Below, piece by piece: positions 2,101 through 62,100 of a DNA stretch of 64,000 nucleotides. Made by a program: the position numbers and the translations under genes. This DNA is from Piromyces finnis finn (Eukaryota; Fungi; Neocallimastigomycota): assembly GCA_002104945.1 (NCBI GenBank), contig MCFH01000024.1, positions 124,001-188,000 on the forward strand. The letters are read 5' to 3'. The first letter of the stretch is position 1, and the number at the start of each line of letters is the position of its first letter. The notes beneath the pieces are model-generated. The model saw nothing but the letters and a program-made list of their open reading frames with translations. It searched no databases and was not told the origin of the DNA.

Positions 2101-2886
2101 TTAATAAAAGATAATAGATAAGATTGAAATTAAAACTATGGTTATTAAAGAGAATGAAGTTTTCATAACGCCTGATTGATAAAGATCTGGTTTATCAATT
2201 TCATAATAATCTTGGGAAACACATTCTTCAGAACCTAATAATTCAATAGCTTTTAAACTATTATCTAAATATTCTTGTTCATGGGCAAAACGAGTACTAT
2301 TAATTTCAATATCATGTGTGTAAAGTGTAACTAATGTATCATATATGAAATGTAAACTTTCTCTACAAATTCCGTTACTACAAAAACTTTTCAAAAGAGT
2401 ATCTGTATCATTCATTGTAAGACGGAATAATTGAAGTATACTGTATGTTTCATCAAAAATTGATTTGGTATAAGGACATATTTCACCATTTTTATCTGTA
2501 GAACAATATACTAAATAAACATTCTTATTCGTTCTTACATAATCATAAATATCAAAGTCATCTGTTCCATTACCATCTTTACATATATCATCAGATAAAA
2601 ATAAATTATCTATAAAAGCTTTACATGCATCATCATTATACACTTTACACACTACTGGCCAATCGACATTAATATTAGTGATATTATAATTATCATTATC
2701 TATATAATTAAAACAATCACGATAATATTTATCATAATGATTTTTACATTTTTGACTAGTTATATATGGAATTATTTTTCCATAATTATAATAAGTATTT
2801 AAGGTAACATAATTTTCCTTTTTTCCTTCTCCTCTTTCAAAGAAGAAGAAATATAAACTAAATAAAGAAAATAAGAATAGTTTCAT
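2101..2886 (-). CDS. Secreted Cys-rich protein with predicted GPI-anchor signal, paralog 1 (intronless, 261 aa)
   Basis: N-terminal signal-like MKLFLFSLFSLYFFF; 10 Cys; C-terminal small-residue site (QSG) followed by hydrophobic tail SFSLITIVLISILSIIFY; clearly paralogous to 4568-5341. Confidence 0.8.
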   Translation of the reverse strand: MKLFLFSLFSLYFFFFERGEGKKENYVTLNTYYNYGKIIPYITSQKCKNHYDKYYRDCFNYIDNDNYNITNINVDWPVVCKVYNDDACKAFIDNLFLSDDICKDGNGTDDFDIYDYVRTNKNVYLVYCSTDKNGEICPYTKSIFDETYSILQLFRLTMNDTDTLLKSFCSNGICRESLHFIYDTLVTLYTHDIEINSTRFAHEQEYLDNSLKAIELLGSEECVSQDYYEIDKPDLYQSGVMKTSFSLITIVLISILSIIFY

Positions 2887-2917
2887 TTTATTTTTTTTAA
2901 TTCCTTGTAGTATATAA

Positions 2918-2958
<41 letters not shown>

Positions 2959-4523
2959 TTTTTGTATTTATTTAAAATAAAAAATTATAAATATTCATAT
3001 ATATATATATTTTTTATCCTCTTTTTATATAAGATGTTATAATTCATCATATGAAATAAAAGAAGGTTAACTTTATATATTATATTAAATGAAAGAATAT
3101 AAATTTTAAAGTTCTAAAAATTTTATATTTATTTTAAATCTTTTCATAAATAAAAATAAACTTTATTGAAATTCTTTTTTTTTTTTTTTTTTTCCTTTCC
3201 TTCTTTCTTTCTTTCTCTCATATTTTTTATAGTACAAACAATGATTTATTATATATATTAAACTCTATATATACATTATCTTTTTTTATTAAAATGAATA
3301 AATAAAATAATAAAATTACTATATATTTTTTTAATGTTATTATTATTGTCTCTCTTTTTGTTTTGTCTTTCTTTTTTTTTTTTTGAAAATGAGAAAAAAA
3401 AAAGCGATAAATAATAATTTTAAAGTAAAAATAAAAAAAGTCTTTACTTTAAAAATTAGTTTCAATTCAAACCTTACTAATTATTATTTTTGTAGAATAA
3501 ATAATAAGGAAATGAAAATTTATTAGGTTGATAAAAAAAAAAAAGCAATAAACTTTTTTTTTTTCCTAAAATTTATTTTTAGCATTAATTATTTTATATC
3601 TTTTTGAAACAAGAAATCTTAATAAAAAGTTGAAAAGTTGTTAAAACGAATATTTTTTTTATAGACATATGAATATATATTTAAAAAAAAAAAAAACTAT
3701 AAATAAATATATAATTTTTACAAACAATAAAAAAAAAAGTTGATTTATTGAGTTTATTAATAATTTTAAATTATATAATAATATAATTAATTTCCTCAAT
3801 CTAAAAGTATCGATAAAATATTTTTCCTTTATTTAATATTTTTTAAAATTTAATTAATCCTAACACCATTATCTTTTTTTTATATGTATATTCTTATTTT
3901 TTTATATAATGTAATATATAAAACACTATATTTCCTTCCTTTATGATTTTGGATACTTTTGAATTTTTTTATGATAATATTATTATCTTTTTTTTTTTTT
4001 TTTTTTTTAGTATTAATGCATTTTATACTAATTTATTTTTTAATATTAATATAAAAAAAATACTGGAATTTCTTTTATATAATTATAAATATAAAATGTA
4101 GAATAGAATAGTGTATTTAAAAATATAATTTCACATCTAAAATATTGTTAGTACCCTTACTTTCTTGTCCTTTTAAAAATATATAAAGAATAACTAAATT
4201 TTTAACATTATATATATACATTTTCACAAATCTAATTCAATTATATTCATTTAAATAGTAATATTATTATTTTATTATTTTATTATTTATTTATTAATTA
4301 ATTAATTCTTATTCTTCTTTATTATTAAATATTTTATTATAGAACAAAATATAGTATATACAAACTAAATTATATAATAATAAAAAAAAAAAGTTCTTTT
4401 AAAGTATTATTATTATATATAATAGAGTAATTTATATTCTTATATATTTATATATTAAATATAATATATAATATATTTAATTCAATAGTTATTTTATTTT
4501 TAATGAAAGTAATATATATAGGT

Positions 4524-7300: not shown

Positions 7301-9606
7301 ACTATATGTATGTAGAAAATACAAATATTTTATACAATATCTCATTTTCATCCTCTTTTATCTTTTATATAATAAAAAAAGAATTCTTTTAAGTTTATAT
7401 TAATTTAAAAATCGTTTTATTTTATAATAATAATAATAAACATAAGCATAACAACAGCAACAATTTTTATCATAATAATAAAATAATATATAAGAATTTC
7501 GTTGTTTATCACCTCAAAATAGAAATGACAAATACAATGACAATATCATATGATATATAACACGTGATTAATCAAACTATGTCATCCTTTTTGTAATTAC
7601 ATTTATGGATTAATTTCCATTGACATTTATTTGTACCATTCAATACATTTCAATTGTCTTTCATTATCATTGTCATATTAATATTACAATTATTTTCACT
7701 ATGCCTCGGTGGATTAGACTTTTTTATGTTTATCGTATGATTATTTATGCATTGTCTTTTCTTTTTCCTAAAAAAAAAACTAAAAATTAAAAAAAAAAAG
7801 AATAGAATTATTTAATTTCTTATTTTTTCATTCATTTAATTAATCAAAGGGTTAAGTAAATTATCCTTTTTTAAAACTTTTATCTTGATCTTTTTTTTTT
7901 ATTAAAAAACTATCTGCACTAAAAACTTAATTTTTTTGTTTTCTTTTTTTTTATTTCAAATGTCAAAATATTTTGATTAACAATTAATAAAAAAAAATGT
8001 TTACTTTTCTCGTTTTTTTTCTTAAAAGTAAACAAGAATAAGAAAAAACATTGATAAATAAATCAATGAATGAATAAATAATATATTAAATAAATAATTT
8101 ATTGATAAATTAATAAATATAAATTATATTATTTAAATAAACCATTGATCTTATCATTTTTTATCTTGTAAAGTGTTGGTGGTGCTTTTGCCTTTTTTCC
8201 TCCCAACCTTTTAAAATTTAATGGGCAGAACTTTATCATAAAAAACTGTGAAAATAAATTAAATTTCAGCAAATCGTCTTTCTATGATAAATAAAAAAAA
8301 ATGGAGATAAACCAAAATTTAATTTAATTTTTATAGGTGGAGGAAATGGAAAATTAAAAAAAAAAATTAAATTTTCTTATCTATTAAATTTATATTAAAA
8401 TATATTTAAAATAAATTGGAACAATATATTAAATATAATTTTAATTAAATTTATGTATTGACTATTGAAAAAATAATGAATAAAAAGAACAAAAGAACGA
8501 ATAATAATTAATACTAATACTACTTAATACTACTACTACTAATTAATAATAATACTATTTAATACTACTATTAATTAATACTACAAATTAATAATAATAC
8601 TATTTAATAATACTAATTAATAATAATACTTTCTATTTAATACTTTCTATTCAATCTTTTACTATTATTCCTTCCTTCACCGCTATTCATTCTTTTTTTT
8701 TTTTTACCAATATAAAGAAAGGGAATTTATTCATTTCCTAATTTTTATATTAAAATAATATTAAATTAATAAATTAAAAATTTTAAATTTTATTATTAAT
8801 TAAAGTTTTTTTTATCTTTTAATTTTTTTTTTTGATAAAATAAAAAATATCATTTTTATCTCTTTTTTTTTTCTCTACCAAAAAAAAAAAAAAACTCTAG
8901 TAAAATGTTATTGAAAAAAAATAACAATTTTATTTAGAAATTATTTCTTCTTTTGTAATCAAGCCTTAACAAACCCATAAATATTATTTTATTTTAAATA
9001 TATTATCGATAAAAAGTATATATATTTTTTATTAAAAAAACGTTTTTTTTTTTTTATCAAATATTTAATTATTCGTTACTTATTGATAACAACAACAACA
9101 ACAACAACAAAAACAACAACAACAGCACCACAAATAGCAAGAACAGTTTTACTTGAAATATAATATTTAAATAATAATAATAACTTAATAATAATAAAAA
9201 AAATAACTGTATTATATATTATTAAAAGAAAATTTTTTTAATTGTTCATAATAAATTAAAAAAAAAATAATTAATTAATTATTATGGCAATTAAAATAAA
9301 TTTCTGAAAAATTAAAACATTTATCAAATTTATATTTTAATTCAACTTTTCAAAAAAAAAAAAAAAAAATTCTTCTTTTTTTTATTATATATAACATTTA
9401 TAAATTTATATATAACAGTAATAATAGGTAAATTATAAAGTTAAAAAAAAAAAAAGGTAATTTTTATATAAAAAAGAAATAAAGACGAAATATAAAATAT
9501 ATATTCTAATACTTAAAGTATTTTATTTTTTAAATAAAATAGTTAAAAAAAAAATAAAAAAGCAAGAAGGAAAAAAGTTTAGTTAATTAAAAAAGAGAAA
9601 ATCACC

Positions 9607-35533: not shown

Positions 35534-38500
35534 TTAATCTTGTAATGTTAATAAGATAGATGCTACAATATGATAGAATTAAAAATATATATTAATACTT
35601 TATATTTTTTTTTTACTTTGTCTTTCTATAATAAAGTAAGAACATAATTGTCTACCTGCAATTAATTGTAATTCTTGATATTCTTTCATATTTTCTTGAA
35701 GAGTTTCCATAATTTGAAGGTATCTAAAAAGGGTATCGCGAGGCCAAAGGGTTTCTTTCTGTTTACCCAAAAGTCCATGAAATGTATTACTAATCGTATT
35801 TTCCCAACCTTTATTATTTTTCAATAATAAAATATTTGTGAATATAAATATGATATGTAAATACAAATATTTAATTAATAATTATACCTTGTGATATTTT
35901 ATTACTGACAATTAACAATCTTTGAATTGTCTCTATAATATCTGAATCTTTTATACTTTCAAATTGCCTATTTTAAATAATAATAAAGAAATTAATAAAA
36001 TATTATATTACTAAATAATTATATATATTATCAACTAAAAAAACTATATAACATACTTATCATCTTTATTAAATTATATAAGAGCAAAAAAAAAAAAAAT
36101 AGGAATAATTAAAATTTATAATTTATATTATACTATTATTAATATATTAATATTTTACCTTCATCCTAAATGCAACAAATAAAATATAAATATTAATACA
36201 TTATAAAATATATATTATAACTACTAATTTATATATTAATATTACCATATTTACGCTATTTAAATTTTTCGAAGAAATATTATTACTAGTTTTTGAATTA
36301 TTATTATTTAATACTTCATGGCTTAAAAGTGAATCGTCTAACCCTAGTTGATTTCTTTTATTTTCTGTATCATCATCATAATATGTATTGGTTCTTGTAG
36401 AATCTTCATTTACTGTTTTTTTTAAATTTTCACTATTATGATATGATAGTGTGTGTAATGTAATTAATGTAATTATATATTAATAATTAATTAATATATA
36501 TAAATATAAAATTATAGCTAGCAGATAGTATAAAACAATTTTATTACATTGATGAATTAAGATTTCCCTGTATCTTTAATTCTTCATTTAATTTTTTTCT
36601 CATTTGTTCAAATCTTTTAGTCTTAATCATTTCTGCTTTTTGTTCATTCATTGCATCATTAATTTTATCGAAATTATTAACTATATATATTTTAAAAATA
36701 ATAAGAAATTGTTATTAAATAACATTTTCATTTATACTTATAATTAAAAACTTAAATGGTAGGATCAAATGATTTTAGTACCCATAACACCAACGAATAC
36801 ATTTCTAAAAATAAATGCACCAAGACATGTCCAAATAATAATATAAGCGGTTGTTACAATTGGATTAGCAATAGTTGAAATCTCGGTTACCATATCATTC
36901 CATTGATCAAAAGTTAAAAGTTGAAACAAAGTTTTAAAACTTTCCCCTATAGAACTAAATTAGTGGAATTAAATAATTATTAATAAAAATATATATTTAT
37001 TAACTGTTTTCTTTTTACTTTTGTATTTTTTTACCCAAATCTATCATGAAAACGTAAATCTGTTTGTGTTGATTTTGTGTATGTTTCAAATAAACTCATT
37101 CCCAAAATAGCAAGAATATACATGACAAGCATAATTAAAATCATAATGAAAACCAAAGACTATATATTTATATTAATAATTAATAAGTTAAATTTTTTGA
37201 AAAAAATAAAAAGCTCACTAATATTATTAATAATGTTACTTGGAATGCATCAAGAATAGTTAACACAATAATTTTTAAACTTCTAAACTTAACAACCTAT
37301 TTGAAATTATAAAGGAAAAAAATTAAAATTATTTAATATTTGATTACTACTATATTTCTTATAGATTTAATATATTTCTATATTTACAATTTTAAACATT
37401 CTCAACACTCTAAGAATTTTTAATTTCTTTAGTACGTTACCAATTCCACTATTACTTCCTTCAATAAAAAAACCCATAACTTCAGGTATAGTACTCTTAT
37501 ATAAATATATTTAATTATGTATTAATTTATATATATATTGTATAATTACTTATTATGTAATTTATTTATATACATACAACAACTGTAACAATAAAATCAG
37601 TAACATTCCATCCATCTTTCCAATAATCTGTAAATGAATCTATCCATTTTATAATAATTTCTGAAATAAATATAACCATTGAAACTAAATCTACTACACT
37701 AGCTATTTTAAATAAAGTTGCATATTGATCTTCTTTAAATTGTAATTCTATAATTTTAATTTTCCATAAATATACACAAATATCTATTTAGCAAAAAAAA
37801 AAAAAAAAAAAAAAATATTAATATTAAGAAACAATAATTTTCATTACCTGTGGTGACACCAATCATTACAACATTAACAATAATAACTATAAGTATAAAA
37901 TTTTGATATGCTTTCGCTTTATATATATGTATATATAATTAATTGTTAAGAATGAATTTATTTTATATAATTTACTATTTTTTTTTTTTTATATAGGATA
38001 AGTACTATTTATTAACCAATTAGCCCATGCACCCAAGGGAATATTTTTTAAATTCTTAATTCTAGTTAATCTACGATCAATTTTTGAACCTTTTGACTTC
38101 TCTTGAATTCTCTTAAATGGTTGAAACTTAATTAAATGATTTGGATGTTCAATAAGGATTTTTTTTAAAACCTTTGGGTCTTGATAATTTTTAATATCAA
38201 TAACAATATAAATATAAATAATAATAATGTATACATTTATTAGTATTCTAATTAAAAATATTTATTTTAACATTAACTAAGTTTAAACCTGATAAATCAT
38301 TTGAAGTATAAATTGGAGCTTGAGAATTAAAGTTATTGTTAATATTATCCAAAAGTTGAAATTCATCTATCAACTTTGTCCGAAATAATGAAGATCTTGA
38401 TGACAGATCATGAAATACCTATTATTAATAAATAGTATTCATTTTATTTCATATAATAATATTAGTAAATATTAATTTTTCTTTTTTTTTTTTTTTTTTG

Positions 38501-38584
38501 TTGGTATTGTTTCATTGCATATTCCTTTATTATTACATTATCGGCGGCCCCTTTTTTTAAAACAGGATCCTCTTTTGAAGTCAT
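35534..38584 (-). CDS. CATSPER2: Cation channel sperm-associated protein 2-like, 6-TM Ca2+ channel pore subunit; apparently intact, multi-exon
   Basis: Hand-spliced in frame with canonical GT-AG sites. N-term LSSRSSLFRTKLIDEFQLLD (human CATSPER2 LPRADAIRSRLIDTFSLIE); PLGAWANWLI (PLSLWAGWVL); S2/S3 IFISEIIIKWID..YWKDGWNVTDFIVT; S4 KILRVLRMFKIVVKFRSLK; pore LFQLLTFDQW; S6 WTCLGAFIFRNVFVGVMVNNF; C-term ETLWPRDTLFRYLQIMETLQEN (ETVWPRDSLFRYFELLEKLQYN). Confidence 0.9.
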
Positions 38585-45626: not shown

Positions 45627-46288
45627 AAAGAAAAAGCATATTAATATTATTATCAAAATAAATATACAAATATAGATGTGGAAGAATTTATAAAGTGTAA
45701 TTCACATCAATATTTTGAATATTTATTAAAGGAGAAACCAGTCTACTAAATATAGAATAATTTATAGTTCTCAATACATTTTTAATAGCACCAAATTATT
45801 TGAATTATTCCTTTTTTTTTTTTTTTTTTTTTCTTACCTAAAAATAATACTATACTATAATCTTAAAATATATTATACATTTTAATCAACTATTATTCAA
45901 TAATTTAATGAAATAAATTTTTTACTATTTTATATGAACAAAGTTATTTAATAAATTTTAATTTTTTTATTGTTTTGATTTATTATACGAATAGAGGAAA
46001 CATTATTTAATAAAAATGAAATAGAAATTAAAAAAAAAAAAAAAAATCAAAATAGTATTTTATTAAATGTGTTTTTAATGATATTATTGTTATTATTGAT
46101 GTTGCTTTCGTTTTCTTCATTTTTTTTCTTTTTTTTATAAAAAGTAAAATAAATAAAATAAAAATATATTTTTTTTTCATTATTATTTATTTCAAAATAT
46201 GAATATATAAATATAAATATTCTTTTTTCAATATTGATTAATACTTCATTTTATAAATATTAAATTAAATAGACTGTACTATTATAAT

Positions 46289-49200
46289 CTAAAAATCAAA
46301 GAAACTTCTAAATGATTCTAAATCTCTAGCGTCAACCCTATCCAATAAATCTTTTCTTCCTAAAGTAATTAAAGCAGTACGTAAAGTTTCCCAAACTGAT
46401 GTTGAATTTGCATCTGGTCCATCACCAATACCTTCAACTCCATAGTATTCATTATTTCCTGATTGGATAGATAAAGCGCCAAGTAAATGTTCAACTGCCT
46501 CTTTAACTTCATTAATATTCATACAACTAATAGCTAAATTATATCTTGCTCTAATATAAGATGGATTAATTTCTAAAGCATGGAAATAGGCCTCAATAGC
46601 CTTTTGGGGTTCATTATTGTTAGCTAGCATAGCACCTAATCTATTATATAAAATATGATCCTATTGATATTATTTAAATATTAGTATAATGATTCTAACC
46701 TTTTATTTCTTTTAATAATACTAGGATTTAAAATTAATTTTTATTTTTTTTTTAAAAAAAAAAGAAAAAGAAAAAATTTACCATAGGTCTTTTACTAATT
46801 GCTGCTTCAAAGCAATCAATAGATTTATCATAATCACCAGATAAGTTAAATAATAAGCCAAGTCCAATTTGAACATCAGCATCTAAATCAACACCTGGCT
46901 TAAATCTAGCACATTCTAATAACAAATCTGTAAGGAATTTATGACGATCTGAAGAATGGTTCATAAACATTGGATATTTATTCAATAAATGGCTGTATTT
47001 ATCACTATTAAGAATCCATGATTCTAATGAATCATAAGAATTTTCAATATATTCTTCATTTGAATAAGAAATAGCTAAGGACATCCAAGCATCTAATAAT
47101 TTTGGATTGAGTTCTGTGGCCTTTTTTAATGCTGAAATAGCTTGTGGTTCTCTTTCATTTTCTTGTTGACGATTACCAAGTTCTAACCAAGCATTTGCAT
47201 TTTTTGGATCATTTTGTACAATAGCTTCTAATGCTAAAATAGATTCAACTAAATTTGAAAGACTTAAGGCTTCATCTAATGTTGGGATGGTATAATTTAA
47301 TATAAATGGATTATTCTTTTGGAAGACATAATCAGTGTATAAATTGTCAGCAGCACGTAAGCTGGAATCTGATTGATCAGTGGTATCTATACCTGCCCAT
47401 TCTTTATTTTTAGAATCAACATCGATATCTTTTATATTATTTTGGTAATCACGAACCCAGTCTTCTAAACTATATTGTCTTTCTTCAACAACTTCATTTT
47501 CAAGGTTTTCTATAATTTCTTCATCAGTCTCTTGTTCTCTTTGAGAATCTTGATATTGCGTAGATGTTGATGCAGCTTCTTCACCAATGTCTAGTTTGTC
47601 TCTCATAAGGTTATTTAATTCTGTTACGGGTATATTGTTATTTAAGCTTTGAAGGTAACTAGATTCTGCTAAATTAATAGAAGCATTATCATAAGTACTA
47701 TTATTTAAGTATTGAGGTTCGCTTTGTTTTCCTTTACTCTCTGAAGAATTTTCTTGTTTAGCTTTAGCTAATTCTGCTTCTTTTTCCTTTCTTATTTCTT
47801 CAGCTACATATTTTTGATAACTATCACCCCACATAACAGGTTCTTCAGCTTCACCATCACCCATAAAATAGTTTGCCCACTCAGCTTCTTCATATCCAGC
47901 ATAATTTTCTTCCCATACATTTTCTTGTGAGTTCATTTCATAGCTTTCTTCATCATCTACTTCTTCTTCAACAGTTTGATTTGGATCACCAAATCTTGAA
48001 TGATCATAAATTGATGAAGATTGATTATATATATCTTCATTATAATTAATAGGTGATGATTGTTGTTGCTGCTGTTGTTCATATTGCAAGTTTTGTTCTT
48101 CGAGAGCTTCTCTTTGTGATTGCTCTTGGATGTGTTTTTCCATCTCTTCTTCTTTAGTGTTAATATTCATTCCATGTAATTCATCCATTTTTTCTTTATG
48201 CATTGCATTTAATTTTTCAGTTAATTCTACCGGATCAATGTTTAATTCGACATTCGGTATTTCTTTTATATTTTGTTCTTTATAATCATCAACTAATACA
48301 TTATTTTCTTCATTATTTATTTGGGTATTATTAAATTGATTTATATCATATATTTCTTCACCATAAATTTGTTGTGGTTGAGAAGTGCTAACACTTGGAA
48401 CTTCATCAAGTGGATTTAATGATGGTTCATGTTCCTCAAATGATTGTTTATTACCCTCATCTTTTGATACAACTTTATTTTCTTTAATGGTAACTTCGTG
48501 ATCACGTATTTGTTTCATAAAATCCATGAATTTTGAATCTCTAAATTTTGGATTATTTGAATATTGAACCGAATCTAAAACTAATCTTGCTGCTTCTGCT
48601 AATTCCTCATCATCTACTTCGGTAAATTCTTGTTGCTTTGAAAATTCATCAACCCATTTCTCTGCTTCCTCTTGTATATGATCTGAAGATATTGCTTCCT
48701 CTGAATTTGCAATTACTAAATTTTCATATTTAAAATAATACATATATTAATTTAATTTTAATAAAATAATATTTCCATAGTTATTAATGAATAAAAAAAA
48801 TAAAAAAAAATAAAAATTTATTATATTTTTATTACATTTAGCATTTTCGAATGCTTTATCTAATTCTTGTTTATCGATATTAGCTTGTTTATTGGCATTA
48901 GCCATTGAATTATTTACATTACTATTTAACATAGTTGCATAAGGTGTTTGAAACTGAAATTGAGGCATAGGATTTTGATACATTACTTATTATTTTTAAA
49001 AATAAAATTATATATAAATTGTTATAATTAAATATAAAAAATTATAGTAATTGATTAATAAATAAAATTTAATAATAAATTGATAAATAATAAAAGAAAT
49101 GTTAAATATATACATGGTGTATTAAATGGTTGTAATTGTGGTTGTGGTGTAGTTTGCATTTGATTGAAATCATTTATAAAACTAGCAGATGTCTCATTCA

Positions 49201-49937
49201 TAAAATCAGTTGCCCAATTATCCATTTTATTTATATTTTGTTTATGAGCTTCTACAACAGGAGGTTTTGGAGTATTTACCATTAAAGATGGTATAGTTGG
49301 TGCTGGTGGTACTATAGTATTGAGTTCATTATAAAAATTTTTAAATTGAAATGAATCATGCATTTCTGGCATAGTATTTCCATTATTAAAAAAATTATCA
49401 ACTGTCTTTATTACAATTAATTAATTACAGCATCAAAATAAAATTTAATTTTATAAAATATAATTTTTTAAAAAAATAATATAAAAAAAGGATATACATA
49501 ATAATATTTAGTTTCAAAATTTAAATACAATTTTTAAATACATTTTAAAAATAAATTCTTTATATAACTAAATTATAAATAAATACTTTATGTTCATTAT
49601 TAACTATAGGGGCTTGGGAAGGTGATAAGAAATTCTAGATAAAAAAAATTTATACAGATGAATATATTTTTTAAAAATGCATACATGATTTATAATGAGA
49701 AAAATATAATTTTAATATTTACCATTCCTTGTTCAGGAAATTTACCCTTTTATTAAAAATAATAATTATAATGTTTTAATTAAAAATTCAATAAATTTAT
49801 ACTTATATATATATTTGGAATTTAGAATTTACCTTACGAAGTGAACCATCTTTATCTAATTGATTAACTAATTGCATTGTTGGATTAATACCAGCACATG
49901 CTGAATTAGAACCGACAAAATCTTGAAACCCGGACAT
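46289..49937 (-). CDS. PEX5: Peroxisomal PTS1 receptor Pex5, long form with PEX7-binding motif
   Basis: N-term MSGFQDFVGSNSACAGINP (conserved Cys); WxxxF/Y motifs WATDF, WVDEF, WEENY, WANYF, WGDSY, WVRDY; PKFRDSKFMDFMKQIRDHEV; TPRs AILALEAIVQNDPKNANAWLELGNRQQENERE, DADVQIGLGLLFNLSGDYDKSIDCF, LGAMLANN..AIEAYFHALEINPSYIRARYNLAISC. Confidence 0.95.
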
Positions 49938-51942
49938 GATTTGAAGTTATTTATATTAAAAAAAAAACTACAATCCAAAAAAAATCCAAAAATTTAATTT
50001 TACTTTTATTATATATATAATAAATAAAAGATTGATGATTATTTATAATTTATATAATAATTTTAATTTATTTTCAATTGGTTTAATGTATAAAATAAAG
50101 GAAAAGTTATGAATTAAATTCAATAATCGTATTTGCTTTTTCTTTTTTTATTATGTTCATAAATTAAACATTTTAATTTTAAGTTTTTAAATTCTTTTTT
50201 TAAAAAAAAAGTTGATTTTAATTTCTATTTTTTTCTTTTGGTATAACTTATCTAATACTAATAAATATTATATTTTTTTTCTTTCTATAAAGTATTTATA
50301 TATTTATCCTTCTTTTCTTATTTTATAAATGATTTAAGCATTACTAATGTGTTATTGTCGTTTTTAAAACTTTAAAAAAAGAAAAAAAGAAAAAGAAAAA
50401 AAAAAAGATTAAATTTGTATATTTAATGATATTGATATATAATAATATATGTAACTAATATATTTAAATTATATTCAAAATCTTTCTCAAATTATATTGA
50501 TATCAATAATTAATTTTAAAAAAAAAATTAAATTTTATCTCTTTTTTATATATTATAAATTTGTCGCAAAAATAAAAATTATTCCCTAAAAATAACCCAA
50601 AATACCTTTTTTTAATAAGTAAATTCTAATCTCTTAAAAATATTATATTTAAAATTTTGAAAAAAAAAATAGTGCAACATAAAAAAATTAAAAATAAAAA
50701 TCAATATATGAATCAATAAATAACAGAATAGCAAATATTATATTGTTGTATACAATAGATAATATACACAACAATATATTAAAAATTTTAATTTTTTTAT
50801 AAACAAAAAATGGTTAAGATTTGAAAATTGAAAGGGTTACATTTTATATAAAAAGTGTACTTTAACAATCGATGAGCAATACTACTACATAATAATATGT
50901 GTACATAATACTAATACTAATACTAAAACTAATACTAATACTATTAATACTGGTGCTGCTTTATCTTGTATATCTTTTAAAACTACTTTTATTACTGCTA
51001 TTACTATATCAAAGCAAAGATTTTATTTATGTTTTTACTATAAAATATAGCAATTATGTTAAATATTATTTATAAAATTTTATCTTTATTATTATTTAAA
51101 ATCTTTTTTTTTTTTTTTAAAAAAAAAGCATTGTTATAATGCATAACTTTTTGACAAAGTTTAGCACTCGAATGCTAAAAAAAATATTAGAAGCAACCAT
51201 ATTTTATTATAAATAACCCACATTTTTAACTTTTATAACAATTTATATATAAATCATATAATATTTTTATATTATATAGATTATATATAATAATTTTTGT
51301 TTTTTAATCCAGATACAATATATATTAAAATTTATAAATCTACAATAATATATAAATAAATAAATATATATATATAAATAAATAGATAAATAATAAATGA
51401 ATAAATAAATGAATAAATAAATAAATAAGTATAAAAGTTTTTAGAATTGTAGTGAAAATACCAAGATTATTAATTTCTGGTACCAAATAAATATGGCAAG
51501 AAATTTTTAAATTTATGTAATATTATATTAAAATAAATGTTAAATTTTAATGTAAAATGCTTTTTTTTTTTAATCATTTTTGTTTGTTATTGGTTAGATC
51601 AAAGCCCCATATATATATTATTAATCAGGATTTGTCCAATCAACAACAGTAATATTGTATGTTATTATTTATAATGTAAACTATTTATTACTTATTTCGT
51701 ACATACAAAAATGCAATTTGTATAGGCCAGATATTTTAATAAATAATTATTATCCATACATAAACATATATATAATTTATAATATTAAAAATATTTTTCT
51801 ATATAAATACTAAAAACTAATACATTATAGAATAATCAACGTAATTAGTTAAATGTATTAAAATATAATAATAAATTTAAATAATTTATTTTTTTTTTCT
51901 TTGCAATAAAACAAAAAAGAATTATATTAATAAAATATAAAG

Positions 51943-59157: not shown

Positions 59158-62100
59158 TTAACAAATGATACAATTTTGTTTTGGAGCTTCTACTCTTTTT
59201 TCATGGGTAATTGGGTTGGTTTGAGTATTAACAAAACTTGTATTTGTAAAACTAGTATTAGCAAAACTATCGTTGTAATTGTTGTCGTTATTATTGTTAA
59301 TGCTACGGTTGAATTTTGAATTATATAACATAAGTCTCTTTTGTTTAGTATTGAATTTTAGTACTCTACCAGTACTATCTGTTTGTTCAAAATATTCTTC
59401 GTCATTTGATGAAGATCCTTCAGAATTTGATGATGATGCTGATTCAGCTTCACTTTCAACATATGGTGATTCAGCATTACTTTCCGATATTTCTCCATCT
59501 TCTAAATCGCTCTTTTCATTTTCTTCACTATCTTTATTTTCCTCACTGTCCTTACTTTCTTCATTGTCTTTACTTTCCTCACTATCCTTACTTTCTTCAT
59601 TGTCTTTACTTTCTTCATTATCTCCGTTTTCTAAATCTATATCCTTTTCTTTAATTTCTTCTTCATCATCTTCTGCCTTATTTTTACCTTTATCTTTTTT
59701 CTTTTCTTCTACTATTTCATTTTGGTTTTCTTGTGCTTCTTCTTCTTTTTCTTCTTCTTCGTTTTTCTTTTCTTCTGTTTTGTTTTCATTTTCTTCATCT
59801 TTCCCTTCTTCATCTTTGTCTTCAGTTGATGGTAATACAGCATTAGATACATTTTCTATTTTTTGCTTCTTGATTTCATTAGTTTCTTCATCAACAATTT
59901 TTCTTTTTTTACAACTTTCATATTCATTATCAACTGTATTTTCACGCTTTCTCTTGCTATGAGATGATTTTTTATTAATAACTAAATCTGGGTTTTCTGT
60001 TTTAAATGAATTAAAAAAAAATACAATGAATATACGATGAATTTTATACTAATATTTTATATTCCTATAATATTATTTATATTAACCTTCAAGTATTCTT
60101 TCATATTCACTGAATGGTACAACAGAAATTTCTTCATTTAACCATTTATCCTTAAAAAGATTAACCATTTTTCTATCAAATACCTTAACAATACAACCAT
60201 ATGAATTCTTATCTAAGCAAACATGAACTCCTCCAATAATACCTTCTTCGAAAGTTTTAATTAAAACTGGTATCTTCCATGAAAGTGGATAGTTATAAGC
60301 ATAAAAGACATTGCTTCTATCAACAATATCTTTATTCAATTTTTAGATTCATAATAATAGTAATAAAAATAAGATAATGAATTTTAATAGATGAAATATA
60401 AATCTATAATATTAATTATTTTTATTGTTAAAATCATTATTTACCATCATTTCCCTTAATAGTTGAAATGTAGGACATATCTGATTGCATGATGAAAACT
60501 CTATTTTTATACTTTTTATATAAATCATTTGAATAAAGTGATAATTTATTTGATTCGTATTCAGTTACTTGAGATAAAAGTTCTTTTTCATTATCAATAT
60601 TTTCTTCAATTCTCTTATTTTCTATATTTACATTAATACAAATATACAATATATAATCGTTTAATACTTATTCTATGTAACGATGGTAATAAATAACAAA
60701 ATTTAATAATTACCTAAAAATGCACTTAATTTAATAAATAATACACCTGTAATATAGGCATCAAAACCAGCTTCATGACATAATTCTAAACTTTCATAGT
60801 TTTTAGATGTAATATCCTCATCATCTGGAATAACCATTAAATCTATAGAGTCATAATATTATATTATTAAAATCCTTATTCCAATTTATTTTTTTAACTT
60901 TTGAATTCTTTTTTTTTTAAATTTACCAATATCTGGACATTCTTTAATAGAACTATCGGCAGTCTTTTTGGCGTCCATTAATGCAGATGAAATAAACATT
61001 TCCTTTATTATTATAATTATTTATATTGTGTTAATATTTAACTGAAAAAAATTCTTTCTTTTTTTTTTTTAAATTATTAAAAAGCAAAGTAATTACTCTT
61101 AATTTATAGGTGCTTTCAATGATATATTTAGTATCGAAAATACTGGATTTATTAGTTTTATTTGTAAAATGAAAAAGTATTAAGGTCCATTAAATAAATA
61201 AATATATATGTATATGCATAATAATAATATTGATAAAAATAATGTATTATGATTAATGTCAATTTTTTTTTAAAAAAAGTATACTTCATTTATAATTGAA
61301 TATTGTAAATTTTCATACGTTGGGAAAAGACTTGAAACCTTCTTTTGGAAATTAGTAAAGTGATGTGGTAAATCTGAATGGAAACCTTGAATTAAATGAC
61401 AAATATCAAGAAGCATATTATGACCAACAATTGGCTTTTTTGTTAAAATTAAGTAATCAATAACTTTACGGAATCCAATTAATTCATTAATTTCATCCTA
61501 TAGATTTTTATATAATTGTATGGTAATATAAATATATATAAAATAATGTATATTTGATAAATACATAGACCATTTCATTCTATTTTATATTTTATAAATT
61601 AATAAGGATTAAATATTTACAGCAAGTTTTTCTTCTTTAGTTCTGAAAGCAAATTTTTCTTCTTCAGTTAATTTTGTTAATTTGATTTCGTCGGATGATA
61701 CAGATTCAGAAGATACAAAACCATTTGTTCTAATTTTTACAAAATAAAAGTTCAATTAATATTTTATTCCGTGTTTATTTTAAATACTTTTGAAAATAAT
61801 TATAATGATGATGCCAATAAAAAATATAGATATTTTTTTCAATTTCATTATTTTTGTTGTTTTGAATACATACAATTTTCTGACTTGTTGATGAATGATT
61901 TTTTTCAAGTATCTATTTGGTGCTTTAACAATTAAAACTTTTTCTGGAGAATTTTGTAAGAAATCATCTAATTGAGCTCTAATAAAAACGATAAGTTGTA
62001 TTATAATTTAAAGAGTGTTAATAAATGTTTTTTTTTCTTATAAAATTATATGAGATAATTTTTTTTCTTTATTATTTGAAATCCCTACATAAAATTCATG

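What the first reader, a model, noticed from the sequence alone, without database searches (positions are those of the whole stretch)
46289..49937. Complete PEX5 implies peroxisome-type import in a probable strict anaerobe
Seen: all functional parts are present, including the N-terminal recycling Cys (Cys14), six WxxxF/Y Pex14-binding motifs and a full TPR cargo domain. Established: Pex5 is the PTS1 receptor; anaerobic peroxisomes have been described in Archamoebae; gut fungi have mitochondrion-derived hydrogenosomes. Inference: this organism may keep an anaerobic peroxisome-like organelle with unknown cargo. I cannot confirm how well this is already documented for gut fungi.
Basis: partly seen in the sequence, partly recalled or inferred. 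Interest (0 to 1): 0.7.

Follow-up and report, generated by a model that had tools for sequence, protein, structure and literature searches.

The report
Complete PEX5 in anaerobic gut fungus
The strictly anaerobic gut fungus Piromyces finnis has a complete gene for PEX5, the receptor that carries proteins into peroxisomes, together with nearly the whole peroxisome-building toolkit and several enzymes that carry peroxisome address tags; so these fungi very probably keep catalase-free, oxygen-independent peroxisomes, which no study in the searched library describes beyond one sentence in a 2016 paper.

Summary
Window 46289-49937 (minus strand) holds a 7-exon gene of 2925 coding nt (974 codons plus stop), and all six introns are GT..AG. 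It encodes a PEX5 with Cys14, six WxxxF/Y motifs, a PEX7-binding box and a full PEX5-type TPR domain (E about 1e-30 to solved PEX5 structures). The window is Piromyces finnis. The public model ORX49240.1 ("TPR-like protein", 398 aa) is identical to the 3' part but starts at an internal Met, so it lacks every N-terminal functional element.

The same genome encodes PEX1, 2, 3, 10, 12, 13, 14, a second PEX14-like protein, 16, 19, four to five PEX11 and an ABCD transporter. Six-frame Pfam searches found no catalase and no acyl-CoA oxidase.

I verified targeting signals on six enzymes:
- MFE-2/Fox2-like: -AKL, conserved in Neocallimastix.
- Two FMN hydroxy-acid oxidase/dehydrogenases: -SKL and -PKL.
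- One of two malate dehydrogenases: -SKL.
- Fumarate reductase-cytochrome b5: -SKL.
- One pyruvate formate-lyase paralogue: PTS2 RIRAIYQHL, conserved.

PEX6 was not searched and PEX7 was not found. This scan had already noted several of these tagged enzymes on other pieces of this genome. Seppala et al. 2016 mentioned the import machinery in passing. I class it as a new member of a known kind, the anaerobic peroxisomes known from Archamoebae.

The parts
49833..49937 (-). Exon 1 (35 codons). It starts with MSGFQDFVGSNSAC and carries the conserved N-terminal Cys14 (codon 49898-49896), the site of recycling mono-ubiquitination in PEX5/PEX20 receptors.
   Evidence: The exon is 100% identical to Orpinomyces P0001 residues 1-35, and Cys14 is kept in P0001, P0003, P0008, P0016 and P0037.
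49723..49746 (-). Exon 2 (8 codons, GKFPEQGM).
   Evidence: It is colinear with P0001 residues 36-43 and flanked by AG and GT.
49587..49634 (-). Exon 3 (16 codons).
   Evidence: It is colinear with P0001 residues 44-60.
49114..49405 (-). Exon 4 (292 nt). It contains the first WxxxF motif, WATDF, at 49216-49202.
   Evidence: It is 70% identical to P0001 residues 61-157.
48836..48985 (-). Exon 5 (150 nt), with split codons at both ends.
   Evidence: It is 65-88% identical to the orthologues.
46782..48715 (-). Exon 6 (1934 nt). It holds WVDEF, the PEX7-binding box, an acidic low-complexity linker with WEENY, WANYF and WGDSY, then WVRDY and the first part of the TPR domain.
48456..48611 (-). PEX7-binding box (Pfam PF25098, PEX18/PEX21 C-terminal domain), the element that makes a PEX5 or PEX20 a PTS2 co-receptor.
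   Evidence: It scores 25.1 bits on the exon (cut-off 25) and 28.3 bits in the six-frame genome search, where it is the only hit in 56 Mb. The same family is precomputed on most of the orthologues listed.
46782..47333 (-). N-terminal half of the PTS1-binding TPR domain (exon 6 part), including the PEX5 hallmark block LGNRQQENEREPQAISALKKATELNP...LAISYSNE.
   Evidence: with 4e-35 to solved fungal PEX5 9sfw_B and about 1e-32 to human PEX5 TPR structures.
46289..46660 (-). Exon 7: the C-terminal half of the TPR domain plus the C-terminal helical bundle, ending FFDF and the stop codon.
   Evidence: It matches human PEX5 2c0l_A residues 187-301 at 2.7e-30, with the Asn/Arg-rich motifs YNRLGAMLANNN and RARYNLAISCMN conserved. 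It is 95-97% identical to other gut-fungal orthologues.
47604..47606 (-). Internal ATG at which the public P. finnis gene model ORX49240.1 (398 aa) begins. Everything upstream is missing from the public protein.
   Evidence: P0013 is 100% identical to the exon 6 tail (275 aa) plus exon 7 (123 aa).

Best explanation
This is the complete, functional PEX5 gene of the anaerobic gut fungus Piromyces finnis.

Inferred mechanism, by homology with studied PEX5 proteins:
- The C-terminal TPR domain binds C-terminal PTS1 tripeptides (-SKL, -AKL, -PKL) on folded cytosolic enzymes.
- The six WxxxF/Y helices in the long acidic N-terminal half dock the loaded receptor on PEX14/PEX13 at the peroxisome membrane.
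- The PEX7-binding box lets the same protein act as co-receptor for PTS2 cargo, because no separate PEX20 is detectable.
- After cargo release, Cys14 is mono-ubiquitinated by the PEX2/10/12 RING complex and the receptor is pulled back to the cytosol by the PEX1/PEX6 ATPase.

The compartment it serves is most likely a catalase-free peroxisome without acyl-CoA oxidase. That would make it an anaerobic peroxisome like those of Archamoebae, here alongside the hydrogenosome. Its predicted content is dominated by redox enzymes: a malate dehydrogenase, a fumarate reductase-cytochrome b5 fusion, two FMN hydroxy-acid dehydrogenase/oxidases, an MFE-2/Fox2-like enzyme and one pyruvate formate-lyase paralogue.

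Shown here: the gene structure, all motifs, their conservation, the presence of the partner genes, and the targeting signals on cargo. Inferred: actual binding, import and the existence of the organelle.
For: PEX5 identity:
- Both TPR-bearing exons match solved PEX5 structures at 1e-30 to 1e-35.
- Cys14 and the six WxxxF/Y motifs are present. Six of seven pre-TPR Trp residues sit in such motifs, P about 1e-6.
- The PEX7-binding box is the only PF25098 hit in the genome.

Purifying selection:
- Full-length orthologues of 897-1002 aa exist in Orpinomyces, Neocallimastix californiae, N. lanati, Anaeromyces robustus and Piromyces sp. E2-like data, and they keep every motif. The TPR exon is 95-97% identical, against 59-71% for linker exons.

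Expression:
- Related 979-995 aa proteins lie on contigs of only 2.9-3.5 kb, which fits intron-free transcripts.
- Four runs hold 0.67-0.75 of the gene's words, and the exon fraction is 0.80.

Partners in the same genome:
- PEX14 and a PEX14-like protein, PEX13, PEX2/10/12 with their RING signatures, PEX3, PEX19, PEX16, PEX11 x4-5 and PEX1, and an ABCD transporter at 1e-80.

Anaerobic type:
- No catalase was found, in a search whose control rang in 6 of 14 genomes. No ACOX was found. The only thiolase is Erg10-like and has no PTS2.

Cargo signals checked here:
- FMN_dh C166 -SKL and C178 -PKL.
- MFE-2-like -AKL, also -AKL in Neocallimastix and another gut fungus.
- MDH C173 -SKL, while its paralogue on C167 has none.
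- FRD-cyt b5 C112 -SKL on a terminal mini-exon.
- PFL C209 with RIRAIYQHL at residues 9-17, identical in an 85%-identical orthologue whose flanks differ, and absent from the other 11 PFL copies whose ends were read and from chytrid PFLs.

PEX14 N-domain with the WVDEF segment of PEX5:
- Weak support. Score 0.41, best of 3 controls 0.02. The mark was reached by 51 of 78 solved complexes and 2 of 108 mismatched pairs, but at 0.60 or under by only 5 of those 78 and by all 4 mismatches that passed. The runs agree in at least 75% of contacts, and the partner's pLDDT is at least 58. PEX5-PEX14 complexes have been solved, so the pass may reflect likeness only.
Against: - There is no localisation, fractionation or microscopy evidence for the organelle.
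- PEX7 was not located despite two attempts. PEX6, PEX4/22 and PEX26 were not searched.
- The ACOX search had no positive control, so that absence is weak.
- The splice junctions rest on GT..AG sites, phase and colinearity with orthologues.
- The PEX7-box score sits at the Pfam cut-off (25.1 against 25).
- The single fumarase has no PTS1, so the predicted cargo does not form an obviously complete pathway.
- A C-terminal SKL arises by chance in a few proteins per proteome, and I could not run a proteome-wide enrichment test.
- The complex prediction is only weak support.
Confidence: 0.8

Rival explanations
1. Conventional, oxygen-linked peroxisome. The organelle is an ordinary oxidative or detoxifying peroxisome used during transient oxygen exposure, for example in zoospores or at the gut wall. 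PEX5 would import H2O2-producing oxidases such as the hydroxy-acid oxidases, rather than serving an oxygen-independent metabolism.
For: Two FMN-dependent hydroxy-acid oxidase-type enzymes carry -SKL and -PKL. A Fox2-type beta-oxidation enzyme and an ABCD acyl-CoA transporter are kept. Pelomyxa peroxisomes are also predicted to hold H2O2-producing enzymes without catalase (PMC8887013).
Against: No catalase was found, although the control rang in 6 of 14 genomes. No acyl-CoA oxidase and no PTS2 thiolase were found, so neither H2O2 disposal nor a beta-oxidation cycle is evident. The other tagged enzymes (fumarate reductase, MDH, PFL) are typical anaerobic redox or fermentation enzymes, and PFL is oxygen-sensitive by established biochemistry.
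Confidence: 0.1
2. Relic or moonlighting peroxins. The organelle has been lost or is being lost, and PEX5 and the other peroxins persist for a non-peroxisomal role, as was once argued for Entamoeba (PMC8172628 discussion).
For: No organelle has been demonstrated. A genome-scale metabolic model of a gut fungus does not mention peroxisomes at all (PMC8561657). PEX7 and PEX6 are not confirmed here.
Against: The set is much fuller than in Entamoeba, which has seven peroxins. It includes the membrane-biogenesis trio PEX3/16/19, all three RING peroxins, both docking peroxins and an expanded PEX11 family. Every functional motif of PEX5 is conserved across genera that have diverged to 49-76% identity. 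Targeting signals on cargo are also conserved. Entamoeba itself was later shown to have peroxisomes (PMC8629394).
Confidence: 0.07
3. PEX5 delivers SKL-tagged proteins to the hydrogenosome, as in the old 'hydrogenosome = microbody' idea, and not to a separate peroxisome.
For: Hydrogenosomes were historically classed as microbodies (PMC2289121 abstract). From memory, unchecked here, an early-1990s report described anti-SKL antibody labelling in Neocallimastix hydrogenosomal fractions.
Against: The PFL copies that look hydrogenosomal carry long N-terminal presequences (MESLT...), a different kind of signal from PTS1 or PTS2. Gut fungi express TOM40 and TIM22/23 import components for hydrogenosomes (PMC5168858). 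Dedicated peroxisomal membrane-biogenesis genes (PEX3/16/19, PEX11) would have no role in a mitochondrion-derived organelle.
Confidence: 0.03

Closest known systems
PEX5 long-form / co-receptor type (mammalian PEX5L, plant and Dictyostelium PEX5, basidiomycete 'PEX5/20')
   Same: It has the N-terminal conserved Cys, multiple WxxxF/Y motifs, an internal PEX7-binding box and a C-terminal PTS1-binding TPR domain. No separate PEX20-type co-receptor is detectable in the genome. PMC8172628 describes this architecture.
   Different: At 974 aa it is much longer than typical PEX5, for example the solved chains of 576-674 aa listed. The extra length comes from a linker of about 350 aa that is acidic (24% D+E) and rich in Asn, Gln and Ser, and that carries three of the motifs. 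It belongs to a fungus, whereas most studied fungi (ascomycetes) split the co-receptor function off into PEX20/18/21.
Anaerobic peroxisomes of Archamoebae (Mastigamoeba balamuthi, Entamoeba histolytica, Pelomyxa schiedti)
   Same: Peroxins are retained in an anaerobe that also has a mitochondrion-related organelle. Catalase and a beta-oxidation cycle are absent. Malate dehydrogenase is among the predicted or shown cargo, and -PKL, -SKL and -AKL serve as PTS1 (PMC8887013 and PMC8629394).
   Different: This is an independent lineage (Fungi, Neocallimastigomycota). The peroxin set is far fuller than the seven of Entamoeba. The predicted cargo differs: fumarate reductase-cyt b5, FMN hydroxy-acid enzymes, an MFE-2-like enzyme and a PTS2-tagged PFL. 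I did not look for the myo-inositol dehydrogenase that marks the amoebal organelles. Localisation has been shown experimentally in the amoebae and not here.
Yeast peroxisomal redox-shuttle cargo (Mdh3-type PTS1 malate dehydrogenase) and trypanosomatid glycosomes (from general knowledge)
   Same: A dedicated MDH paralogue ends in -SKL beside an untagged paralogue. A soluble fumarate reductase carries a PTS1, as known from memory for glycosomal NADH-fumarate reductase.
   Different: The single fumarase has no PTS1, and I did not test whether any glycolytic enzyme carries a PTS. A glycosome-like succinate branch is therefore not demonstrated.

Membership tests
PEX5 (PTS1 receptor) | C-terminal TPR domain with specific similarity to PEX5 TPRs rather than to generic TPR proteins | tested here: met
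   Natural best hits are all PEX5 or PEX5-related: 9sfw_B at 2.5e-31 and 4e-35, and human PEX5 2c0l_A at 2.7e-30 covering the exon end to end. Generic TPR proteins such as OGT score 1e-12 or worse.
PEX5 (PTS1 receptor) | Conserved Cys near the N-terminus, the recycling ubiquitination site | tested here: met
   Cys14 sits in MSGFQDFVGSNSAC and is conserved in all full-length orthologues.
PEX5 (PTS1 receptor) | Multiple WxxxF/Y PEX14/PEX13-binding motifs in a disordered N-terminal half | tested here: met
   There are six motifs. All are conserved in P0001, P0003 and P0008, and six of seven pre-TPR Trp residues sit in motifs, P about 1e-6.
PEX5 (PTS1 receptor) | Physical binding to the PEX14 N-terminal domain | tested here: inconclusive
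   The prediction gave weak support: score 0.41 against a best control of 0.02, and passes at 0.60 or under are more often wrong than right unless the guess was likely beforehand. Like complexes have been solved, so the pass may come from memory.
PEX5 (PTS1 receptor) | Binds C-terminal PTS1 peptides and imports cargo | not testable with these tools
   This needs peptide-binding assays or complementation. Indirect support comes from PTS1-tagged enzymes in the genome whose signals are conserved.
PTS2 co-receptor (PEX5L / PEX20 type) | PEX7-binding box | tested here: met
   PF25098 scores 25.1 bits (cut-off 25) on exon 6 and 28.3 bits genome-wide, where it is the only hit in the genome. The score is marginal.
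PTS2 co-receptor (PEX5L / PEX20 type) | A PEX7 partner in the same genome | tested here: inconclusive
   PEX7 was not located. The only ACBP-domain locus has no PEX7 neighbour, and none of seven WD40 ORFs of 298-388 aa looked like PEX7 by eye. An unchecked first-reader note (s1-190451) reports a PEX7 gene elsewhere in the genome.
Anaerobic peroxisome (Archamoebae type) | Core peroxins for membrane biogenesis, docking, RING ubiquitination and recycling are present | tested here: met
   PEX3, 16, 19, 13, 14, 2, 10, 12, 1 and 11 were found. PEX6 was not searched.
Anaerobic peroxisome (Archamoebae type) | No catalase | tested here: met
   The six-frame search with PF00199 found nothing in 56 Mb, and the control rang in 6 of 14 genomes. 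The caveat is that the search reads exon by exon on an assembly.
Anaerobic peroxisome (Archamoebae type) | No beta-oxidation cycle | tested here: inconclusive
   ACOX was not found, but the control rang nowhere. The only thiolase is Erg10-like and has no PTS2. However, an MFE-2/Fox2-like enzyme with -AKL and an ABCD transporter are retained.
Anaerobic peroxisome (Archamoebae type) | Organelle shown by microscopy or fractionation | not testable with these tools
   No such data were found in the searched library.

The most novel reading that the evidence does not exclude
Gut fungi run part of their fermentative redox balance inside catalase-free peroxisomes. This one PEX5 acts both as PTS1 receptor and as PTS2 co-receptor. 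It imports a malate dehydrogenase, a fumarate reductase-cytochrome b5 fusion, FMN hydroxy-acid dehydrogenases and a glycyl-radical pyruvate formate-lyase. That would be a fermentative microbody distinct from the inositol-centred peroxisomes of Archamoebae and from the hydrogenosome. It could also explain an early-1990s report, recalled from memory, of SKL-reactive proteins in Neocallimastix organelle fractions.
Probability: 0.3. Interest if true: 0.8.

Novelty: new member of a known kind. Interest (0 to 1): 0.55.

Why it matters
Peroxisomes are usually thought of as oxygen-dependent and as the first organelle lost in anaerobes. Catalase-free anaerobic peroxisomes have been shown only in Archamoebae. 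A complete, conserved PEX5 with its whole partner set in Neocallimastigomycota would be a second, independent case. It would sit in a cultivable, biotechnologically important group that also has hydrogenosomes.

This gives a concrete route to testing what a peroxisome does without oxygen, because the receptor, the docking partner and a short list of tagged enzymes are now in hand. Metabolic models of gut fungi currently have only cytosol and hydrogenosome compartments, so they may misplace redox reactions such as succinate, formate and hydroxy-acid metabolism.

There is also a practical point. The public P. finnis protein is truncated to its TPR half, and the orthologues carry only the name 'TPR-like protein', which hides the gene from keyword surveys.

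Tried and rejected
1. Laying reads on 46100-50100 to confirm the junctions. No letters of that stretch were sent to any search tool afterwards, and later scripts read only beside it. The junctions therefore rest on GT..AG sites, phase and colinearity with orthologues.

2. The joined spliced protein was never built, searched or folded. Every exon was used separately by reference. For that reason there is no fold of the whole TPR domain, no whole-protein family scan and no whole-protein length-matched search.

3. PEX7 was sought in two ways. The only ACBP gene (C13:86633) is a small cytosolic type beside a Mago-nashi gene. The second was to read seven WD40 ORFs of 298-388 aa, which turned out to be G-beta, an F-box/WD protein, a GRWD1-like protein, two Cdc20/Cdh1-like proteins, a WDR5-like protein and one unknown. 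PEX7 was not found, which is not evidence of absence.

4. A complete peroxisomal malate-to-succinate branch was considered. The only fumarase (class II, C13:362597) ends EYKPKH without a PTS1, and no class I fumarase was found, so I rejected this as a signal-supported pathway.

5. The second fumarate reductase (C208) has an N-terminal membrane anchor and ends VQVKLA, so it is not a PTS1 protein.

6. The single thiolase has no PTS2 and no PTS1.

7. Literature. No paper in the library combines Neocallimastigomycota with 'peroxin'. The Archamoebae papers and the PEX comparative-genomics paper do not mention gut fungi. The Mastigamoeba paper (PMC6994998) is not held.

8. Conservation of -SKL on the hydroxy-acid oxidase could not be tested, because the gene is multi-exon and its exons are too short for the length-limited search.
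Full report
**What is there**

The window is about 18% G+C. On the minus strand between 49937 and 46289 lies a seven-exon gene: 49937-49833, 49746-49723, 49634-49587, 49405-49114, 48985-48836, 48715-46782 and 46660-46289. Every intron begins GT and ends AG, and the split codons at the exon 4/5 and 5/6 borders close. The exon lengths sum to 2925 nt, which is 974 codons plus stop.

Each was translated, scanned and searched by reference on its own, so the joined step (whole-protein search or fold) was left out.

Each exon is colinear with full-length orthologues of other anaerobic gut fungi. Against Orpinomyces P0001 (994 aa) the exons match, in order, residues 1-35, 36-43, 44-60, 61-157, 164-207, 209-872 and 873-994, at 59-100% identity.

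**Identity as PEX5**

Exon 7 matches the human PEX5 TPR domain end to end at 2.7e-30 (2c0l_A residues 187-301). The Asn/Arg-rich stretches YNRLGAMLANNN and RARYNLAISCMN align to the human sequence.

The TPR part of exon 6 matches a solved fungal PEX5 (9sfw_B) at 4e-35 and human PEX5 at about 1e-32. It includes the block LGNRQQENEREPQAISALKKATELNP...LAISYSNE. Apart from designed consensus-TPR proteins, everything above 1e-18 is PEX5 or PEX5-related protein.

- Cys14 (codon 49898-49896) is present and conserved.
- The six WxxxF/Y motifs (WATDF, WVDEF, WEENY, WANYF, WGDSY, WVRDY) are all there, and all are conserved even in a 49%-identical orthologue.
- Six of the seven tryptophans in the 645 pre-TPR residues have F/Y at +4. 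At an F+Y frequency of 7.4% that has a binomial probability of about 1e-6.

First, exon 6 residues 36-86 (window 48456-48611) match Pfam PF25098, the PEX7-binding domain of PEX18/PEX21/PEX20, at the cut-off (25.1 bits). A six-frame search of the whole 56-Mb genome with that family returns this site and nothing else (28.3 bits). This PEX5 is therefore the only candidate PTS2 co-receptor. That is the architecture of animal, plant and some basidiomycete PEX5 described in PMC8172628.

Second, the public protein is truncated. The listing of cluster members shows Piromyces finnis ORX49240.1, 'TPR-like protein', 398 aa. It is 100% identical to the last 275 residues of exon 6 plus exon 7 and starts at the internal ATG at 47606. 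This fixes the organism as P. finnis. It also means the public protein lacks Cys14, five of the six docking motifs and the PEX7 box.

Orthologues in N. californiae (ORY37746.1), N. lanati, A. robustus (ORX83480.1, 1002 aa) and Piromyces sp. E2 carry only 'TPR-like protein' or 'hypothetical protein' as a name.

**Expression**

Four public runs from three studies hold 0.67-0.75 of the sampled words of the gene span. The exons make up 0.80 of that span, so this is what spliced RNA would give. However, the runs are only guessed to be RNA.

Indirect support comes from close relatives. Uninterrupted 979-995 aa proteins are encoded on contigs of only 2.9-3.5 kb, which in these intron-bearing genes points to transcripts.

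**Is the rest of the machinery there?**

Six-frame Pfam searches of the window's own genome (56,455,805 bases in 232 contigs) gave these hits:

| Component | Result |
|---|---|
| PEX14 N-domain | Two loci. C168 (5e-19) is a canonical PEX14 with N-domain, hydrophobic segment and coiled coil. C2 is a second PEX14-like membrane protein |
| PEX13 | 1e-40 |
| PEX3 | 5e-61 |
| PEX19, PEX16 | present |
| PEX11 | four to five genes |
| PEX1 N-domain | present |
| ABCD-type transporter | 1e-80 |

The RING family search found C184 and C1, and at relaxed threshold C154. Reading those loci shows the three characteristic RINGs:
- PEX12: CPLC...SGYAFCYPC...CPIT
- PEX2: CAIC...CGHIFCYYC...CPRC
- PEX10: CTLCLE...CGHVFCW...ECPLCR, with the N-terminal FPFANQSSIIRSVQFDEYY

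A controlled complex prediction of the PEX14 N-domain with the WVDEF segment gave weak support. The score was 0.41 and the best of 3 controls 0.02. The mark was reached by 51 of 78 solved complexes and 2 of 108 mismatched pairs, but at 0.60 or under by only 5 of those 78 and by all 4 mismatches that passed. The runs agree in at least 75% of contacts, and the partner's pLDDT is at least 58. Because PEX5-PEX14 complexes have been solved, the pass may only show likeness.

**What kind of peroxisome?**

- Catalase was not found, and the control rang in 6 of 14 reference genomes.
- Acyl-CoA oxidase was not found, but that control rang nowhere, so the absence is weak.
- The single thiolase is Erg10-like (KDVYIVSAVRTPMGG...) with neither PTS2 nor PTS1.

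**Cargo**

Earlier notes of this scan on other pieces of the same genome gave leads, and I re-tested most of them on the DNA.

| Enzyme | Locus | Signal | Contrast or conservation |
|---|---|---|---|
| FMN hydroxy-acid oxidase/dehydrogenase | C166 | ...VYASKL | |
| FMN hydroxy-acid oxidase/dehydrogenase | C178 | ...QYIPKL | |
| MFE-2/Fox2-like (SDR-MaoC-SCP2) | C170 | ...PIIAKL on a last mini-exon | Same ...PIIAKL in N. californiae; a 79%-identical orthologue ends ...TPIIAKL. Aerobic relatives end -SKL, -AKL, -AKM |
| Malate dehydrogenase | C173 | ...FVAQSKL | The other MDH (C167) ends ...FVNQA |
| Fumarate reductase-cytochrome b5 | C112 | ...VASVKSKL on a terminal mini-exon after a GT..AG intron | A second reductase on C208 is membrane-anchored and untagged |
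| Pyruvate formate-lyase | C209 | MANKSSID-RIRAIYQHL, fitting the classic [RK][LVI]x5[HQ][LA] PTS2 | See below |

The PFL case needs more detail. I read the ends of twelve of the 15 or more full PFL copies, and only the C209 copy has this N-terminus. An 85%-identical orthologue keeps the nonapeptide exactly while both flanks differ. The other eleven copies I read, and the chytrid PFLs, lack it. Several of the others instead carry long MESLT... presequences of the hydrogenosomal kind.

Against a tidy pathway, the only fumarase has no PTS1. I could not run a proteome-wide enrichment test.

**Literature**

In the searched library, no paper combines Neocallimastigomycota with 'peroxin'. The single relevant statement is in Seppala et al. 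[quoted passage not shown]

A genome-scale metabolic model of a gut fungus never mentions peroxisomes. The anaerobic-peroxisome papers (Entamoeba, Pelomyxa) and the PEX comparative-genomics paper do not mention gut fungi. The Mastigamoeba paper is not held, and subscription literature was not searchable.

**Verdict**

The inference that P. finnis, and gut fungi generally, keep a peroxisome-type import system is well supported by genomic evidence. The compartment is most likely catalase-free. It is not demonstrated, PEX7 was not found and PEX6 was not searched.

This is a new member of a known kind (anaerobic peroxisomes) in a new lineage. It was hinted at in print in 2016 and noted repeatedly by this scan on other DNA of the same genome.

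New here are the full gene model against a truncated public one, the co-receptor architecture with no detectable PEX20, the near-complete peroxin inventory, and a checked short list of tagged redox enzymes.

Noticed in passing
window 47604-47606 (public start codon) and 47607-49937: The public P. finnis protein ORX49240.1 (398 aa, 'TPR-like protein') starts at an internal Met. The N-terminal 576 codons, which hold Cys14, five WxxxF/Y motifs and the PEX7 box, are missing from the public model.
   Followed up: yes
L002 (G000:C2:1165438-1168563): This locus encodes a second PEX14_N-domain protein with a transmembrane segment and a long charged tail. It looks like the fungal PEX33 / PEX14-17 type of extra docking component.
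   Followed up: partly
G000 contigs C164, C175, C180, C44: The pyruvate formate-lyase family has at least 15 full-length copies, several of them as near-identical inverted or tandem pairs a few kb apart. C44 holds a cluster of broken copies with internal stops.
   Followed up: no
L051 (G000:C13:80000-89999) 3411-3807 and 7936-8332: An element of about 400 nt, richer in GC than its surroundings, occurs twice in inverted orientation around a Mago-nashi gene and a small ACBP gene. Its nature is unknown.
   Followed up: no
L060 (G000:C167:1476240-1479740) 2512-3153: Downstream of the untagged malate dehydrogenase lie two to three tandem copies of a unit of about 230 nt, seen as repeated open-frame text. 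It is not identified.
   Followed up: no
L053 (G000:C113:244711-248640): This locus holds a NadB-like L-aspartate oxidase gene, a flavoenzyme that can use fumarate instead of O2. A reverse-transcriptase-like fragment lies just downstream, at locus 3-317.
   Followed up: no
L032 (G000:C170:477883-481227): The gut-fungal MFE-2/Fox2-like protein is about 1060-1070 aa in its orthologues. It stands without a detectable acyl-CoA oxidase or PTS2 thiolase partner.
   Followed up: partly
window 35534-38584 and 59158-59172: Earlier scan notes on this same window report a CatSper2 channel gene and a PARN deadenylase ending in a CaaX box. I did not examine either.
   Followed up: no
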